From Thecamonas trahens ATCC 50062 (Eukaryota; Protista; Apusomonadida), in the NCBI RefSeq assembly GCF_000142905.1, contig NW_013657669.1:310001-374000 (forward strand): a stretch of 64,000 nucleotides of DNA, in the 5' to 3' direction. The position numbers and the translations under genes were made by a program. Shown piece by piece: positions 29,490-35,260 of this stretch; positions within the stretch are counted from its first letter, which is position 1; each line of letters starts with the position of its first letter. Below the pieces are notes generated by a model. It did not search any database. It was given only the letters and a program-made list of their open reading frames with translations, and was not told the DNA's origin.

Positions 29490-31385
29490 TCAGTCACCCT
29501 GCGTCGCGGCTTCCCCCCCGAGGCCGCGCTTGTGCAGCCGCTTAGCTTGCAGAGCCTGAACAGTATTGGCGGCGACAACAAGCGTTCGCTGGTCGTCCTC
29601 GTCGAGCCGATCGAAGAGGCGATACACCCGCGAGACGACCAAGGCCTTGAGCGCCGCCCGGTCGGACGACTTGAACTTGAACGGAATGTGGTAGCGCGAG
29701 AACTTGCGGAGGTAAAAGTACGAGGCCTCGCCCGCCTTGACCGCCAGCGCAAGAAGGACAACGGCCATGATGCCAGCTACAGCGAGCGCAATGCGCCACA
29801 CCGCGTCGGCATCGGCGCCATCGCCCAATGCTACCAGCGAGAGGCCGAACAGATGGGCAACAAAGGTGGCGATGAGACACGCGATGTGGTACGCATTGAG
29901 CTCCGGCCGCAGATACGGCATGAAGAACGCTTCCGCAAGCAGGACGGCAAACCGGACCATGAGTGAGGCGACCACAACGAGGACCGGCGTGTACGTGGTG
30001 CATGCCAGACCGGCGAGCACCGCCCGGAAGCTCGCCTTGATCGCCACCCACCCGTACATGCTCGGCCGGAACGAGACGTACAACGCACCATACTTGAGTG
30101 CCATGTCGCGGTCGTGCCGCGCATGCCCGACGTGCAAAAGTAGCGCCGCGAGGCCGGCCGGCGCAACCACCGCTCCCAGCGCCGACGCCGCAGCCGCCAC
30201 AGGCATCGCCAGCCACCACGCCCGGTCGTAGCAAGGAATATGAGCCGCAAAGATGAGGCGCGTCCCGGCCGCGCCATGGCCTTCGCATGCAAACAGCGAG
30301 ACAGCCTTGAAAAGAAACAGCGGATGGACAACCAACAGCATGTACACAACTGCGTTCGTTGCGTGCGCGGCACGGTCCGAACGCGCGCCGCCGCCCATCG
30401 TGCTCCGCCTGTTCCCGCTGCCCCCGCCCCCGTTTGAAAACATCCTTGCAACCATCGACCGCCCGCTTCCGCTCCCCTCGCTCCGTCCGCACACCGCCAC
30501 AGCGCTCACATACGCCGTGCTCACTACCGCCACCACAAGCACTGGCCCGAGGAGCGAGACGCCCCACAGCTGGTAGAAAGTCAGGCCCGGAAAGACACAT
30601 TCGAGTGCAAGCAGATCGGCGTTGACCAGCGAGACCGACGCCCACTTGAGCGCCGTACCCACCACCCGCGGCCACACCACCGGCAGCAGATAAACCAGCC
30701 CGATGTCCTGGAGAAAGGCCATCACTAGTGGGAGCCACCCGCGGAGAACGCCCACGGGCACCGTAAGTGTCACCGCGCCCATCACCGCCACGTACCCACC
30801 CAGCACAGCTGCCATCCGCAGTATCGGCGCCGCAGAGCACTCGTGACACTCCCAGTGGATGCGATAGTACCCGCGAGCGCACGCACCACACAGCTCGCCG
30901 GTGTGGCCCGCGTCGCACCCCGAAGGCCCGCCGCACGCCGATCGCGCCGCGCAAGGCGCAAACCGCGTGCCTGCCGCGTCTAGCCGGTACCATCCGGGCG
31001 CTGCAGGGAGCGGCGGCTCAGTGCCGCGCGCACACAGCGCTCCGGGCGGACACGGCTCGCAGCTGAAGACGCTCCCGTCGCCGGCCGGCGCTACAAACGC
31101 GAATCCGCTCGCGCATCGACAGAGCGACACATTCCACGCTCCCGGCAGCGACCACGTCGAGCCGGGTGCGCTTGTTCCCGATGCCTCTGCCTCGCACTCG
31201 CGGCAGCTCGCGCTCTCGCCGCCGCTCGAGTATGTCCCGGCCGGGCAGACCGCACAGAACGTCGTTCCGCCACTTCCGCTCGACGGTGCATGGCCGGGTG
31301 GGCAGTAGAGGCCTGCGACCCCGTCTGCGCACACCAGCACCACGCCCGCCAGAGCCAGCCACAGCACCACAGCCGCAACGCCCAT
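29490..31385 (-). CDS. Signal-peptide protein with Cys-rich (ephrin-receptor-like/GCC) repeats and multi-TM domain
   Basis: Signal peptide MGVAAVVLWLALAGVVLVCA; CPPG, CAVCPAGTYS, CEPCPPGALC and GHTGELCGACARGYY; at least 7 TM segments with KYGALYVSFRP. This is a common protist receptor-like architecture. Confidence 0.8.
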   Translation of the reverse strand: MGVAAVVLWLALAGVVLVCADGVAGLYCPPGHAPSSGSGGTTFCAVCPAGTYSSGGESASCRECEAEASGTSAPGSTWSLPGAWNVSLCRCASGFAFVAPAGDGSVFSCEPCPPGALCARGTEPPLPAAPGWYRLDAAGTRFAPCAARSACGGPSGCDAGHTGELCGACARGYYRIHWECHECSAAPILRMAAVLGGYVAVMGAVTLTVPVGVLRGWLPLVMAFLQDIGLVYLLPVVWPRVVGTALKWASVSLVNADLLALECVFPGLTFYQLWGVSLLGPVLVVAVVSTAYVSAVAVCGRSEGSGSGRSMVARMFSNGGGGSGNRRSTMGGGARSDRAAHATNAVVYMLLVVHPLFLFKAVSLFACEGHGAAGTRLIFAAHIPCYDRAWWLAMPVAAAASALGAVVAPAGLAALLLHVGHARHDRDMALKYGALYVSFRPSMYGWVAIKASFRAVLAGLACTTYTPVLVVVASLMVRFAVLLAEAFFMPYLRPELNAYHIACLIATFVAHLFGLSLVALGDGADADAVWRIALAVAGIMAVVLLALAVKAGEASYFYLRKFSRYHIPFKFKSSDRAALKALVVSRVYRLFDRLDEDDQRTLVVAANTVQALQAKRLHKRGLGGEAATQGD

Positions 31386-31976
31386 CCGCCCCCGTCTTCT
31401 TGCGCCGCAAGTGAGTGAGGTGATCACAGCCTCAAGTCAGTGGCGGCATTGCCGGCTTGAGTTGGCCAGCAGGCGGAAGACGACAAAAAAAAGTGCGGTC
31501 CGCGCTCCTCCTCAATTCGAAACCAGACACCCCCGCATACCGCCTCCATGAGCACGCCGCACCCATCTCTGAACCACAGCCGCGAGCTACAACGCGGAAA
31601 CGCAGCTAGCAGCGCCTGCACAGCGGATACCGAGGGTATAACCACGAGCAAAAGAAGGGGGGCCTCGAGGGCCCCTAGAAATTATGTTTGTGGAGCTGAT
31701 AGCACGTTCACCTTGGACATCAGAGAGAAAAGTTATCCGATGTGTTGTTGTAGGCGACGCCAACTCCAACTCGATCCGTCGTTCGCAGTTGACTATAAAC
31801 CATTCATCCGATTGCACGACCGAACGCGACATGCCGCGTCGTCGTGCAGGCTCGCACTCGCGCTCGCGCCACGTGGTGGCGACGTTGACGCACTCACCAT
31901 CACCTCTCGTCTCGCCCAGACAAGACATTGACCGCTCCACCCGGCTTCTTCTCCGTATCTTTATAGAAAGCCTTTC

Positions 31977-33863
31977 ATGTACCGCCTTCTGCGCCCCCAG
32001 GCCGCGGTAACGCTCGCATCGCTGCGGTCGGCATCGCTGACGTCGTCGGCACCTGCAGCGAGCGACGCGACATCTTCGGCGACGGCGTCGTCGCGAGCGA
32101 CCGGCTCGGGCGGCTCGATGATGGGCGCGCTGTCGATGGCCGGCGTCTCGGCCGCACTCATGGCGGCTTCGGTGACTAACGTTGCGGCGACCGGGGCTGC
32201 TGTCGGGCCCGAGGCTCTCGACGATCCGGTCCTTGCCGCCGTCCTCCGCGATGCCGCTGGCCGCGACACTCGCGACGCCGGCTTTGCCGCCGAGCATGAG
32301 CTCGGCATCAGCGGCTCGCCGGCGCTCGACTTTGATTCGCTCACTGGCTTTGCTGCCGATCACCTCTCTGCGCCGGGCCGCATCGACAGCGCGCCACAGA
32401 CCAAGGCCGCGGCGCGGCAGCAGCGGCGACTGGCGGATGCCGTCGCCGCCGCTCTCGAGTCGCCGCCGGTTGCCTCGTCAGCGGTCTTTGGCCCCGGCTC
32501 GCCGACGGGTAGCTACCTGCGCGAGCATCTGGCGAACGCGGGCAAGCCGAGCGGGTCGTCATCGGGGCGGCTGGTCTTTGACGCCGCCTCACCGGTCCTC
32601 CTTCCCGCCGAGTCTCACACCGCGTTTGGCACGCTCTATGCCGGCGTCATGGACGGCGTCCTCCAGGTCTTTGTGCGGCGCATTCCGGCCGATGTCGCCG
32701 ACATTGCCGCGCTCAAGGCCGAGGCCCGGTCCCTGGCCGCGCACGACGCCGAAGGTTGCTGGCTCTCTTTCCGCGGCATCGAGCGCGACGCCCACTATGT
32801 GTACGTCGTCTACTCCGGGCCGGCGGTCCTGCTGCGGGCGGCGCTTGTTGAGGCGGCGGGTGGGAGCGGGCCGCTGGCGACGCTCGGCGCACGGCTGGCG
32901 TTCTGCGCCTCGCTCCTCCGTGCCATCGGCCCGGCGCCAGACCTGGCCCACATTGCGCCGCACACTGTGATGGTGAACAGCGACGGGCTTGCGGTGCTGA
33001 CCGGCTTTGACCCCGCTACATGCGCCCATGCGGGCGGCTCTGATGGCCATGGCCCGTTCTCGTCGCTCGCGGCCCTGGTGTTCTACATTGTGACGGCTGG
33101 CTCGCGGCTCGGCGCCGGTGCGCGACTGGCCTCGGTCCGGGCCATGTGCCCTGTTGCTGGACCTCAGGCTGCGCACCTGGTGCGGGCGCTAGTCGACGGT
33201 ATGGCGCCGCTCGACAGCCGCGATCCCGCGAGCGTGCTACAGCATCCTGCGTTTCTGGCGGCCGAGGCGCAGATGGCGCTCGTTGCCGCGCTCACCTCGC
33301 GAGTCCGCGCCGCGCGCACCCTCGCGGCCGGGCCACCGTCTCGGTTTGCAGCTGCTGAAGCTGCGTTCCTGGCCTCGGTCGAGTCAGCGCTTGCACCCCT
33401 GGCCGACTCTGAGCTTGCGGCTTTTCTCGCGTCGCCACAGGGATGGAAGGGCGCGTTTGACGAGGCAATTGTGGCGCATCTCGGTGCTTTCCGTGCGTAT
33501 GATAGCGGCTCTGTCCTCGATCTTGTCTTTTTTGTCCGCAACTTTGAGGCGCACGCCTCCGAGTTTCCCGACGAGGTGCTTCGCCTTCTTGCCGACACCG
33601 CCGACACTGCCGACGCTGCGGGCGGCGACGTAGAGGAAGCATGCTACAGGCTCCGGATCGAGGCGCCGCGGCGGCGTGCGGCGGTGGCCAACTTTGTTGT
33701 GGCACGCGTGCCATCGCTTGCGTGCTCGGTCTTTGCTGCGCTGCAGGCCGGCGCTGCAGCGCCTTCGCCTGCACCCGCGGCTGCAGCGCCTGCTCCGGTG
33801 GCACAAACGTCGTGGACGACGGTGGTGGCGCGTGGCCGGCGGCGCGACGGCATGTGCGAATAA
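31977..33863 (+). CDS. IRE1/RNase L-like pseudokinase-KEN ribonuclease
   Basis: IRE1-like N-lobe FGTLYAGVMDGVLQVFVRRI...EARSLAAHD...SFRGIERDAHYVYVV, kinase end VLQHPAFL, and KEN motif FRAYDSGSVLDLVFFVRNFEAHASEFP. Confidence 0.75.
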   Translation: MYRLLRPQAAVTLASLRSASLTSSAPAASDATSSATASSRATGSGGSMMGALSMAGVSAALMAASVTNVAATGAAVGPEALDDPVLAAVLRDAAGRDTRDAGFAAEHELGISGSPALDFDSLTGFAADHLSAPGRIDSAPQTKAAARQQRRLADAVAAALESPPVASSAVFGPGSPTGSYLREHLANAGKPSGSSSGRLVFDAASPVLLPAESHTAFGTLYAGVMDGVLQVFVRRIPADVADIAALKAEARSLAAHDAEGCWLSFRGIERDAHYVYVVYSGPAVLLRAALVEAAGGSGPLATLGARLAFCASLLRAIGPAPDLAHIAPHTVMVNSDGLAVLTGFDPATCAHAGGSDGHGPFSSLAALVFYIVTAGSRLGAGARLASVRAMCPVAGPQAAHLVRALVDGMAPLDSRDPASVLQHPAFLAAEAQMALVAALTSRVRAARTLAAGPPSRFAAAEAAFLASVESALAPLADSELAAFLASPQGWKGAFDEAIVAHLGAFRAYDSGSVLDLVFFVRNFEAHASEFPDEVLRLLADTADTADAAGGDVEEACYRLRIEAPRRRAAVANFVVARVPSLACSVFAALQAGAAAPSPAPAAAAPAPVAQTSWTTVVARGRRRDGMCE

Positions 33864-33923
33864 AGTGAGTATTTGAGAGCATGACGTGGAATGGGGCCGT
33901 TTTACTTGCTTTGCGCTGCGTGC

Positions 33924-35260
33924 TCATGTGCGGTCGCCCCGATCGCCGGCCGCAGTGGCCGAGAACACAAACGGGTCGTCGCGGTCCGAGTTGACGACAG
34001 CAGCGGCGGCAGGCGGGCTGGTAAGGATGACGTCACAGTCAGAGTAGCCTCCGTCGTCGTCGTCATCGTCTGCCCCGTCGTCGTCGTCGTCGACATAGTC
34101 GTTGGCGTGCAGCCACTTGAGCACAGTCTCAAAGGTGAGATACACGCATGCAGTCGAAGGAACAGCCTTGAGGGCGTTGGGCTTGAGGCCGCGGTAGAGG
34201 CCGATGAAGCCCTGCTCGCGGACGATGACCTGGATGCAGTGGGCGACGCCGCGGTACTTGACCCTGCGGTCGTGGACGCCCTGGGTCTGCAGCCGGGTCC
34301 GCACAAGCATCATGGGGTAGGTGACGATCTGCGAGAGGAGCGAGGCCGTGGCACCAAAGGCGAGCGAGGTGATGGACGGCAGGCCGGCGTGCAGCTTGTC
34401 ATCACTCACGTGTTCCATGTAGCGGTCGCGGAGCGTAAAGAAGATGCCCATCTCCAGGGCCGAGTACGGGACGTAGCCGAGGAGGTTGGCGACGAGGCCG
34501 CGGTAGAGCGACTTGAAGCCGCCGGTCTTGACCGACCGCACGTAGCAGTCGAGGATGCCGGCAAACTCGCCCTTGGCAGAGACGGTCATCCTTGTCTTGA
34601 CCACCTCCATCGGGTAGATGACCAGCTGGGTAAAGAGCCCGGCGCCGGCGCCACAGAGCATGTTCTCGTGCGGCGCCGGGGCCTCGGGATCGGCGGCAAA
34701 GGCGTCCGTCAGCACGTCGCGCCAGATGAATCGCGACGCCGTCTCGGGAATGACCTGTGCCCCATGGACCTCCTTGCGTGTGAGTCTTCTCCTGCTCCTG
34801 CTACTCTGGTGTGCGAGGGTGGGCGCATGTGCGCGGCCAAGTGGCGTCAGGCGAGGGATGGGCGGCTGAGAGGGCAAGGCGACGAGCAAGGGCGGGGGGG
34901 GGGGGGGGGGAGGGGGGATTGAGGGCAGAGACAAGGCGAGGAACATACCTTTGTGACGTTGGCAAAGTTGCCGCGCCAGAAGCCGCGGATACCGCCCTCG
35001 CGGTAGATGGCGCGGGCCTTGGCGGCTACACCGTGCTCTGCCCGGTAGAGGCGCTCGTAGGCCGCCAGCGACATCCCGGGCGGCCGGGTGGAGACACCGC
35101 GGCCCTCCTGAAGCAGAAGCTTGAGACGGTCGAGCGGCGCGGTGATGGTTCGCGAGACCGCACCGGCGACGCCTCCGGCAAGGAGGTTGGTCGCCAGAGG
35201 CGAGGTGCGGATGTTCGCCCGGAACTCGTCCAGGAACGCCCCTACGCTACCGGCTGCCAT
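33924..35260 (-). CDS. Mitochondrial carrier (SLC25; SCaMC/CoA-carrier-like, no EF-hands); exons 34949-35260 and 33924-34754
   Basis: Carrier signatures AGGVAGAVSRTITAPLDRLK, FWRGNFANVTK|VIPETA, YPMEVVKTR and YPMMLVRTRLQ. The intron 34755-34948 runs GTATGT...CAG. Confidence 0.92.

What the first reader, a model, noticed from the sequence alone, without database searches (positions are those of the whole stretch)
31977..33863. Sensor-less IRE1/RNase L-like protein: dead kinase, apparently live KEN ribonuclease
Seen in sequence: the KEN segment RAY(33498)DSGSVLDLVFFVR(33537)N(33540)FEAH(33552) keeps Y...RN...H. The spacing is Y+13=R and R+5=H, the same as the IRE1 RNase catalytic residues (human Y892/R905/N906/H910), and it resembles RNase L 'DLLKFIRNLGEH'. 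The kinase is degenerate: the VAVK Lys is Arg (VFVRR), HRDLKPxN reads DLAHIAPHT, DFG reads LTGF, and the activation loop is very short. There is no signal peptide plus luminal domain (IRE1) and no ankyrin repeats (RNase L). The N-terminus MYRLLRPQAAVTLASLRSASL is Arg/Ser/Ala-rich and lacks acidic residues, like a mitochondrial presequence. Inference: this is a third type of pseudokinase-regulated RNase in a unicellular eukaryote. It could be an antiviral or stress RNA-decay effector with an unknown activator, possibly organellar, and so bears on the origin of RNase L-like immunity.
Basis: partly seen in the sequence, partly recalled or inferred. Interest (0 to 1): 0.8.

Follow-up and report, generated by a model that had tools for sequence, protein, structure and literature searches.

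The report
Dead-kinase IRE1 relative keeping its RNase
The marine flagellate Thecamonas trahens has a normal IRE1 stress sensor and also a second, very diverged copy that has lost the sensing domain and every kinase catalytic motif but keeps the RNA-cutting site; only one relative turned up in public data, so it is a rare second example of the dead-kinase-plus-RNase design known from vertebrate RNase L.

Summary
Window 31977-33863(+) is one intact 628-aa ORF. Its C-terminal part passes Pfam's curated cut-off for the KEN/Ribonuc_2-5A RNase domain. Y508, R521, N522 and H526 align with the IRE1 catalytic residues. The domain before it has a kinase fold, but the beta3 Lys is Arg, HRD, DFG and APE are gone, and the C-lobe is shortened. 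Predicted structures match only IRE1 (Z 19-21) and RNase L (Z about 17) over both domains. There is no luminal domain and no ankyrin repeats, and the flanking genes leave no room for extra exons.

The genome is Thecamonas trahens, and it also encodes a canonical IRE1 (AMSG_10407). An exhaustive search of 1.84 billion representatives found one true relative, a 657-aa metagenome ORF (40% identity over the region searched). That ORF keeps the RNase residues, the dead kinase, an N-terminal basic peptide and a C-terminal SWTT motif.

A homodimer prediction passed its controls, with an IRE1-type back-to-back interface. This may partly reflect the model's memory of solved IRE1 structures.

My reading is a lineage-restricted, fast-evolving IRE1-family paralogue that acts as a dimerisation-dependent RNase. 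Its input is unknown. The link to RNase L immunity is not supported, and mitochondrial targeting is untested. It is a new variant of a known kind, of moderate interest.

The parts
31977..33863 (+). Complete single-exon gene, 628 codons plus stop: an IRE1-family pseudokinase-KEN protein
   Evidence: It is an uninterrupted ORF. GC3 is 0.76 against GC2 0.59. It is collinear over its full length with a 657-aa orthologue, L003:1781-3754. The gene is bounded by a divergent gene ending at 31427 and a convergent gene ending at 33924.
31977..32036 (+). Conserved N-terminal basic peptide, aa 1-20 (MYRLLRPQAAVTLASLRSAS); possible targeting signal
   Evidence: The orthologue begins MRSFARPHVLASLRGAAT. Net charge is +3 and the first acidic residue is at position 30 (27 in the orthologue). 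AF2 predicts a helix at 5-20 with low confidence. A targeting role is inferred only.
32115..32186 (+). Weakly hydrophobic Ala/Gly/Met segment, aa 47-70; it lies roughly where IRE1 has its transmembrane helix
   Evidence: The best 19-residue Kyte-Doolittle mean is 1.64, against 1.27 in the orthologue and 2.51 for the T. trahens IRE1 TM. MAFFT places it opposite the IRE1 TM. Membrane insertion is not established.
32208..32261 (+). Conserved acidic helical block, aa 78-95 (E.L.DPV..A.L.D)
   Evidence: Invariant between the two orthologues at E79, L81, D83, P84, V85, A88, L90, D92 and G95. AF2 predicts helices at 78-81 and 84-94. Function unknown.
32262..32567 (+). Low-complexity Ala/Ser/Pro linker, aa 96-197
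   Evidence: It has no Pfam hit. pLDDT is mostly below 50. Identity to the orthologue is 30%, with gaps.
32568..33236 (+). Pseudokinase domain, aa 198-420 (beta3 Lys replaced by R234 at 32676-32678; alphaC E249 kept; HRD, DFG and APE lost; C-lobe shortened)
   Evidence: BLASTP against the genome's own IRE1 kinase gives E 4e-4 and 0.013, collinear. VIA-align matches to IRE1 span both domains. R234 is identical in the orthologue.
33237..33761 (+). KEN (kinase-extension nuclease, HEPN-type) RNase domain, aa 421-595
   Evidence: Pfam PF06479 scores 31.7 bits against a cut-off of 23.3. BLASTP against the KEN domain of the genome's own IRE1 gives E 8e-8. pLDDT is about 88-96. The VIA alignments to IRE1 structures (Z 19-21) span this domain.
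33498..33554 (+). RNase catalytic core: Y508 (33498-33500), R521-N522 (33537-33542), H526 (33552-33554); R-x4-H HEPN motif
   Evidence: These residues are invariant in all 36 aligned sequences, including the orthologue. They align with the human IRE1 FRTY...RNKKHH stretch.
33603..33680 (+). Family-specific helical insertion in KEN, aa 543-568
   Evidence: The insertion is absent from all 34 IRE1 rows and present in both orthologues. Residues 553, 557, 560, 561 and 563 lie in the predicted KEN-KEN dimer interface.
33810..33851 (+). Conserved C-terminal basic tail motif, aa 612-625 (SWTTVVARGRRRDG; orthologue SWTTIAATARGRKG)
   Evidence: S612, W613, T614, T615, A618, R621, R623 and G625 are identical between the orthologues, although the preceding tail is unalignable. 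Function unknown.

Best explanation
The gene encodes a lineage-restricted, very fast-evolving paralogue of IRE1. Only Thecamonas trahens and one metagenomic relative are known to carry it.

The protein has lost the luminal stress-sensing domain and all phosphotransfer residues. It keeps the kinase fold as a scaffold and keeps a KEN domain with an intact catalytic site.

The most likely mechanism, which is inferred, is this. Two molecules pair back-to-back through the N-lobe (beta2-beta3 loop, helix C, beta4) and through the KEN domains, as in active IRE1 and RNase L. That pairing would bring the two KEN domains together, as in the active forms of IRE1 and RNase L. The RNase would then cut single-stranded RNA without metal, through the Y508/R521/N522/H526 site, leaving 2',3'-cyclic phosphate ends.

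Autophosphorylation is impossible, and the conserved R234-E249 pair could hold helix C in place. Activity would therefore be controlled by where the protein is and how concentrated it is. The conserved N-terminal basic peptide, the weak hydrophobic segment and the C-terminal basic tail are the candidate localisation or regulatory elements.

Shown here: family membership, the dead kinase motifs, the conserved RNase residues, the lack of a sensor domain, co-existence with a canonical IRE1, and conservation in a second organism. Inferred: RNase activity, dimerisation, localisation, substrates.
For: - KEN domain: the Pfam match is above the curated cut-off in both this protein (31.7 bits) and its orthologue (27.6 bits).
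- Catalytic site: the four catalytic residues, plus R506, D515, P531 and P579, are invariant across 36 sequences. The two orthologues share only 38% identity overall.
- Relation to IRE1: BLASTP matches to the genome's own IRE1 are collinear in both the kinase and KEN domains.
- Fold: the AF2 model has pLDDT of mostly 80-96 (dips to about 50-70 in the 320s-350s) over aa 220-600. Foldseek's listed top hits are all IRE1 or RNase L. VIA-align gives Z 19-21 for IRE1, about 17 for RNase L and at most 11.5 for other kinases.
- Independent fold evidence: the ESM Atlas model, made without my alignment, also matches IRE1 clusters best, with TM 0.68 over aa 198-595.
- Dimer: the homodimer prediction scored 0.57 against a best control of 0.00. 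That mark was reached by 21 of 30 solved homodimers and 0 of 23 solved monomers. The runs agree in at least 85% of their contacts, and partner pLDDT is at least 83. The interface elements (beta2-beta3 loop, helix C, beta4, KEN-KEN) are those described for the IRE1 back-to-back dimer in PMC4536996.
- Canonical IRE1 is present in the same genome: AMSG_10407, with a live kinase.
- Family size: the exhaustive phmmer search found one relative at E 8.5e-56, and after it only canonical IRE1s at about 1e-4.
Against: - No expression, activity or localisation data exist.
- The Lys that follows R-N in nearly all IRE1s (column K523) is Phe here and Leu in the orthologue. From memory, the equivalent human K907A mutant is RNase-dead. 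Also from memory, RNase L has Leu there and is active. So activity may differ from IRE1.
- The AF2 model was built on an IRE1-rich alignment, and the dimer pass may reflect the model's memory of solved IRE1/RNase L dimers (the tool's own caveat).
- dS between the two orthologues is saturated, so the dN/dS of 0.38-0.51 is weak evidence of constraint.
- The hydrophobic segment is too weak (KD 1.64 and 1.27) to call a transmembrane helix.
Confidence: 0.7

Rival explanations
1. It is a modulator of the canonical IRE1. The pseudokinase-KEN protein would pair back-to-back with AMSG_10407 and tune its RNase output, either as a dominant-negative cap or as an allosteric activator. Many pseudokinase paralogues do this to their active partners.
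For: It derives from the same family and co-exists with one canonical IRE1. The structural elements used for back-to-back pairing are retained and predicted to be interface-competent. A weak hydrophobic segment lies where IRE1 has its TM.
Against: A pure modulator would not need the catalytic tetrad, yet it is fully conserved in both orthologues. The KEN interface includes a family-specific insertion that IRE1 lacks, which favours self-pairing.
Confidence: 0.12
2. It is an RNase L-like immune effector: a latent RNase switched on by a small-molecule second messenger or viral cue that binds the N-terminal region or the dead nucleotide pocket.
Against: There are no ankyrin repeats and no folded N-terminal ligand-binding domain. 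Aa 1-197 is low-complexity, with pLDDT mostly below 50. Six-frame scans found no OAS1_C or Mab-21 match, though without a positive control. The nucleotide-pocket motifs differ even between the two orthologues. Structural similarity is higher to IRE1 than to RNase L. The gene is single-copy with no lineage-specific expansion.
Confidence: 0.08
3. It is a doubly dead pseudoenzyme: an RNA-binding or scaffolding protein whose KEN domain no longer cleaves, with the conserved residues kept for RNA binding or folding.
For: It lacks the near-invariant IRE1 Lys after R-N. Both domains are extremely diverged, on a branch of about 9.7 substitutions per site.
Against: All four catalytic residues, including the general acid/base His of the R-x4-H motif, are kept in both orthologues despite about 60% divergence. 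According to PMC3710099, HEPN domains that keep this motif are predicted to be RNases.
Confidence: 0.08
4. It is an annotation artefact or decaying pseudogene: a chance ORF in GC-rich DNA.
For: High-GC genomes give long spurious ORFs; many overlap this locus. Ala makes up 23% of the protein.
Against: A full-length collinear orthologue exists at E 8.5e-56 in an independent sample. The Pfam hit is above the cut-off. The fold is confident. GC3 exceeds GC2.
Confidence: 0.02

Closest known systems
IRE1 (ERN1/Ire1p), including the T. trahens IRE1 AMSG_10407
   Same: Both have a kinase-fold domain directly followed by a KEN RNase domain. The Y/R/N/H catalytic residues are identical. IRE1 gives the best structural matches (Z 19-21). 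The predicted dimer uses back-to-back interface elements. A hydrophobic segment lies upstream of the kinase fold.
   Different: This protein has no signal peptide and no luminal beta-propeller sensor. The beta3 Lys is Arg, and HRD, DFG and APE are absent, so trans-autophosphorylation is impossible. The C-lobe and activation segment are shortened. The KEN domain carries a 26-aa insertion. The Lys after R-N is missing. Sequence identity is only about 20%.
RNase L (vertebrate 2-5A-dependent RNase)
   Same: Both pair a pseudokinase with a catalytically competent KEN domain. RNase L structures match at Z about 17 over both domains.
   Different: This protein has no ankyrin-repeat 2-5A sensor. No OAS was detectable in the genome. 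The nucleotide-pocket motifs are far more eroded.
Arabidopsis/Brassicaceae IRE1C (sensor-less IRE1; PMC6788458, PMC6883098)
   Same: Both are IRE1 paralogues that lack the luminal sensor domain and co-exist with canonical IRE1.
   Different: IRE1C clusters with dicot IRE1s as its own group (PMC6788458). The Thecamonas protein is a dead kinase, is extremely diverged, and has only a weak hydrophobic segment.
Other KEN architectures catalogued by Anantharaman et al. 2013 (PMC3710099): solo KEN expansions in Oikopleura and monocots, and fusions to CCCH, ubiquitin and BRCT
   Same: These show that the KEN domain has been redeployed outside the IRE1 and RNase L contexts.
   Different: Those are solo KEN domains or different fusions. 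None is described as a sensor-less pseudokinase-KEN from a protist.

Membership tests
Pfam PF06479 Ribonuc_2-5A (KEN domain, HEPN superfamily) | Profile score above the curated gathering cut-off | tested here: met
   The score is 31.7 bits against a cut-off of 23.3, E 1.8e-7, over aa 486-543. The orthologue scores 27.6 bits. A six-frame genome scan gives 34.6 bits.
Pfam PF06479 Ribonuc_2-5A (KEN domain, HEPN superfamily) | R-x4-6-H RNase motif plus the upstream Tyr and the polar residue after Arg | tested here: met
   Y508, R521, N522 and H526 are invariant in the 36-sequence alignment. The motif definition comes from PMC3710099.
Pfam PF06479 Ribonuc_2-5A (KEN domain, HEPN superfamily) | Endoribonuclease activity | not testable with these tools
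   This needs an in-vitro cleavage assay with an H526A control.
Canonical IRE1 | N-terminal signal peptide and luminal sensor domain | tested here: not met
   Aa 1-197 has no Pfam hit. The flanking genes leave no room for further exons. The orthologue shares the same start.
Canonical IRE1 | Single transmembrane helix between the sensor and kinase domains | tested here: inconclusive
   Aa 47-70 has a KD mean of 1.64, against 1.27 in the orthologue and 2.51 for the T. trahens IRE1 TM.
Canonical IRE1 | Active protein kinase (VAIK Lys, HRD, DFG, activation loop) for trans-autophosphorylation | tested here: not met
   The Lys is replaced by R234, HRD, DFG and APE are absent, and there is no Pkinase Pfam hit.
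Canonical IRE1 | Kinase fold directly fused to a KEN domain, with a back-to-back dimer | tested here: met
   VIA-align gives Z 19-21 over 321-346 residues. The homodimer scored 0.57 against a control of 0.00 with an IRE1-type interface; this is a prediction only.
RNase L | N-terminal ankyrin repeats that bind 2-5A | tested here: not met
   No ankyrin Pfam hit even at E up to 10. The N-terminus is disordered in the AF2 model.
RNase L | Pseudokinase that binds nucleotide but does not phosphorylate | tested here: inconclusive
   The catalytic motifs are dead. Nucleotide binding could not be tested, and the pocket motifs are not conserved between the two orthologues.
RNase L | Partner OAS enzyme that makes 2-5A in the same genome | tested here: inconclusive
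   PF10421 and PF03281 gave no match at E up to 1 in six-frame scans, but neither search had a positive control.
RNase L | Phylogenetic grouping with vertebrate RNase L | not tested
The tree contained IRE1s only.

The most novel reading that the evidence does not exclude
The conserved N-terminal basic peptide followed by a moderately hydrophobic Ala/Gly-rich segment and an acidic block may be a bipartite mitochondrial sorting signal. The protein would then be a KEN/HEPN RNase anchored in or stored behind a mitochondrial membrane. There it would either process organellar RNA or be released as a latent RNA-destroying effector during stress or cell death. No KEN-domain RNase has, to my knowledge, been placed in that compartment or role.
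Probability: 0.12. Interest if true: 0.8.

Novelty: new variant of a known kind. Interest (0 to 1): 0.48.

Why it matters
As far as I know, RNase L has been the only characterised case in which a dead kinase controls a KEN RNase, and it is confined to vertebrates. A second pseudokinase-KEN protein, of unresolved origin and with no detectable link to RNase L, sits in a protist lineage close to animals and fungi. This suggests that the IRE1 kinase-RNase module can lose both its sensor and its phosphotransfer chemistry and still be kept by selection.

The protein offers a natural test of how much of the kinase is needed to license the RNase. It has no nucleotide-binding motifs, a short C-lobe and an extra helix in the KEN interface. 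It could also reveal a new input, such as localisation or membrane association, for this class of RNA-decay switches.

It does not, on present evidence, bear on the origin of OAS-RNase L immunity.

Tried and rejected
- Word-index protein searches with the whole protein and with aa 205-580 returned only the query. The exhaustive phmmer search replaced them.
- Searches for more family members found none: JGI metagenome contigs by peptide patterns, a degenerate 45-nt FFVRN..AH..EFPD pattern, and IMG/VR viral contigs. The patterns were strict, so distant members could have been missed.
- A 47-row maximum-likelihood tree put the pair on a branch of about 9.7 substitutions per site, outside all IRE1s. 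The AU test did not reject a clade with the Thecamonas IRE1 (p 0.396). The question of a recent duplication against a deep origin stays open. RNase L could not be included.
- NG86 dN/dS was 0.38-0.51, but dS is 1.2-1.6 and saturated, so the ratio is not informative.
- I tried to compare the N-terminus with genuine T. trahens mitochondrial presequences (HSP60, ATP synthase beta, citrate synthase). This failed because their first coding segments are not in frame with the matched exon.
- OAS1_C and Mab-21 scans were blank and had no positive control.
- A literature search for Thecamonas with IRE1 found no paper.
- The neighbouring PIP5K on the orthologue's contig is about 50% identical to a T. 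trahens gene. That fits a related protist but does not name it. There is no synteny with this window.
Full report
**The object.** Window 31977-33863(+) is an uninterrupted ATG-to-stop ORF of 628 codons. An in-frame stop lies 16 codons upstream. GC3 is 0.76 against GC2 0.59, as expected for coding sequence in this roughly 65% GC genome.

The gene is boxed in on both sides. A divergently transcribed gene (29490-31427, minus strand) encodes a Cys-rich ectodomain and a TRP-like membrane domain. A convergent mitochondrial-carrier gene has its stop at 33924, 60 bp from this gene's stop. That leaves no room for a luminal-domain or ankyrin exon.

**The organism.** The genome is that of Thecamonas trahens. 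Earlier agents said so. I confirmed it because the canonical IRE1 on contig C59 of the same assembly is 100% identical to NCBI's AMSG_10407 of T. trahens ATCC 50062.

**The observation.** Y508, R521, N522 and H526 lie at 33498, 33537, 33540 and 33552.
- Pfam Ribonuc_2-5A (KEN) matches aa 486-543 at 31.7 bits, above the curated 23.3-bit cut-off.
- The only PDB sequences matched at E up to about 0.1, apart from one unrelated chain (9c72, Spindle defective 2, E 0.033), are IRE1 chains. HMMER aligns FRAYDSGSVLDLVFFVRNFEAH with [22 protein letters not shown].
- I aligned this protein, its orthologue, the T. trahens IRE1 and 33 other IRE1s. Only ten columns are invariant, and the four catalytic residues are among them. 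The others are P424, F426, R506, D515, P531 and P579.

**The kinase-like domain.** No Pkinase profile matches, but BLASTP against the genome's own IRE1 gives collinear matches through the kinase (E 4e-4 and 0.013) and KEN (E 8e-8) domains. Motif by motif:
- The Gly-rich loop is degenerate.
- VAVKR is VFVRR, so the beta3 Lys is R234.
- The alphaC Glu is kept (E249).
- HRDIKPQN is reduced to AH--IAPHT.
- DFG has no Asp, and APE is gone.
- The activation segment and part of the C-lobe are deleted.

The KEN domain is complete. Its first helices (HPAFLA...LTSRVR) and last helix (FVVARVPSLACSVF) align with IRE1. It carries a 26-residue insertion at aa 543-568.

**Structure.**
- AlphaFold2 on that alignment gives pLDDT of mostly 80-96 (dips to about 50-70 in the 320s-350s) for aa 220-600. 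Values for aa 1-197 are mostly below 50.
- Foldseek's listed top hits are all IRE1 kinase-RNase or RNase L chains.
- VIA-align gives Z 19-21 over 321-346 residues for IRE1, Z 16.5-17.2 for RNase L and at most 11.5 for other kinases.
- My alignment was rich in IRE1s, so I looked for independent support. The ESM Atlas's own model of this protein also matches IRE1 clusters best, with TM 0.68 and 0.67 over aa 198-595. ESMFold2 folded aa 198-600 without my alignment at pLDDT 83-84.

**Relatives.** An exhaustive phmmer search of aa 200-600 against 1.84 billion representatives found one real relative, P0002 (E 8.5e-56, 40% identity). After it came only canonical IRE1s at about 1e-4. P0002 sits on a 4.95-kb ENA metagenome contig. 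The ORF there actually extends upstream to 657 aa (L003:1781-3754).

The two proteins are collinear end to end at 38% identity. The orthologue shares these features:
- the KEN Pfam hit above the cut-off (27.6 bits);
- the catalytic tetrad and the beta3 Arg;
- loss of HRD and DFG, with a catalytic-loop region that differs from this protein's (which argues against a conserved nucleotide pocket);
- the KEN insertion;
- the N-terminal peptide (MRSFARPHVLASLRGA against MYRLLRPQAAVTLASLRSA);
- an Ala/Gly/Met-rich weakly hydrophobic stretch;
- an acidic E.L.DPV..A.L.D block;
- a C-terminal SWTT..A..RGR motif.

No further members were found in the T. trahens genome, in JGI metagenomes or in IMG/VR.

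**Origin.** In a 47-sequence tree the pair is joined with full support but hangs on a branch of about 9.7 substitutions per site, outside all IRE1s. An AU test does not reject grouping it with the Thecamonas IRE1 (p 0.396). A lineage-specific duplication followed by very fast evolution is therefore compatible with the data, and so is an older origin. RNase L sequences could not be obtained by reference, so the KEN tree lacks them. The structural scores favour IRE1 over RNase L.

**Mechanism.** KEN RNases of both IRE1 and RNase L work as back-to-back dimers. A two-copy prediction of aa 198-600 scored 0.57 against 0.00 for the best of three controls. That mark was reached by 21 of 30 solved homodimers and 0 of 23 solved monomers. 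The runs agree in at least 85% of contacts, and partner pLDDT is at least 83.

The symmetric interface uses the beta2-beta3 loop (225-230), helix C (247-254), beta4 (265-268, within the FRGIE motif invariant between the orthologues) and KEN residues 438-461, 528-529, 553-563 and 592. The N-lobe elements are those described for the human IRE1 back-to-back dimer (PMC4536996). The tool warns that such a pass may reflect memory of solved relatives, so it shows likeness and does not show binding.

From this I infer a dimerisation-dependent, metal-independent RNase. The dead kinase would serve as a permanent scaffold. Control would lie in localisation or concentration, possibly through the conserved terminal motifs.

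The N-terminal features are these: net charge +3; no acidic residue before position 30 (27 in the orthologue); a weak hydrophobic stretch with KD 1.64 (1.27 in the orthologue; 2.51 for the IRE1 TM); then an acidic block. They fit either a degenerate IRE1-type anchor or a bipartite mitochondrial signal. I could not run a targeting predictor, and my attempt to read T. trahens presequences from three mitochondrial genes failed.

**Comparison with what is known.** KEN domains outside IRE1 and RNase L have been catalogued: solo expansions in Oikopleura and monocots, and fusions to CCCH, ubiquitin and BRCT (PMC3710099). Sensor-less IRE1C is known in Brassicaceae (PMC6788458). A 2023 survey reports KEN homologues, mostly with a kinase domain, across eukaryotes (PMC10400998). 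No paper in the searchable library mentions Thecamonas together with IRE1.

The protein fails the IRE1 membership tests for the sensor and for the active kinase. It fails the RNase L test for ankyrin repeats. OAS1_C and Mab-21 scans of the genome were blank but had no positive control. It is best described as a new variant within the IRE1/RNase L family. It works like a stripped-down RNase L but is structurally nearer to IRE1.

**Caveats.**
- Nothing here shows expression or activity.
- The near-invariant IRE1 Lys after R-N is Phe or Leu in this family. Its importance in IRE1, and its absence from RNase L, are from my memory and were not checked here.
- dS is saturated, so dN/dS (0.38-0.51) says little.
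- The family has only two known members.

**Verdict.** This is a new variant of a known kind, with interest about 0.48.

Noticed in passing
L001:31-1878 (own genome G000:C59, canonical IRE1 AMSG_10407): The canonical T. trahens IRE1 carries an insertion of about 70 aa, rich in Ser/Pro/Arg and low in complexity, inside its KEN domain. It lies just before the conserved W...LGKYRKY segment and is absent from the other 33 aligned IRE1s.
   Followed up: partly
window 33864-33923 and 33924-35260 (-): A mitochondrial-carrier gene (Mito_carr, E 1.3e-46) converges on the KEN gene, with only 60 bp between the two stop codons, so the 3' UTRs probably overlap. Its ORF ends in a poly-Asp/Gly tail (DDDDDGADDDDDDGG).
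   Followed up: partly
window 29490-31427 (-): The divergent upstream neighbour, about 550 bp of shared promoter region away, encodes a Cys-rich ectodomain (Ephrin_rec_like and DUF7630 hits) joined to a multi-pass domain that weakly resembles TRP channels (PF06011, E 2.5e-4).
   Followed up: partly
L003:127-1617 (+): On the metagenome contig, the orthologue's upstream neighbour is a PIP5K-domain protein about 50% identical to a T. trahens gene on contig C1. There is no synteny with this window, and the source organism is unidentified.
   Followed up: partly
window 33810-33851 (+): A short C-terminal motif, SWTT[VI]..A..RGR, is conserved between the two orthologues although the tail around it is unalignable. 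It matches nothing I know and has no assigned role.
   Followed up: no
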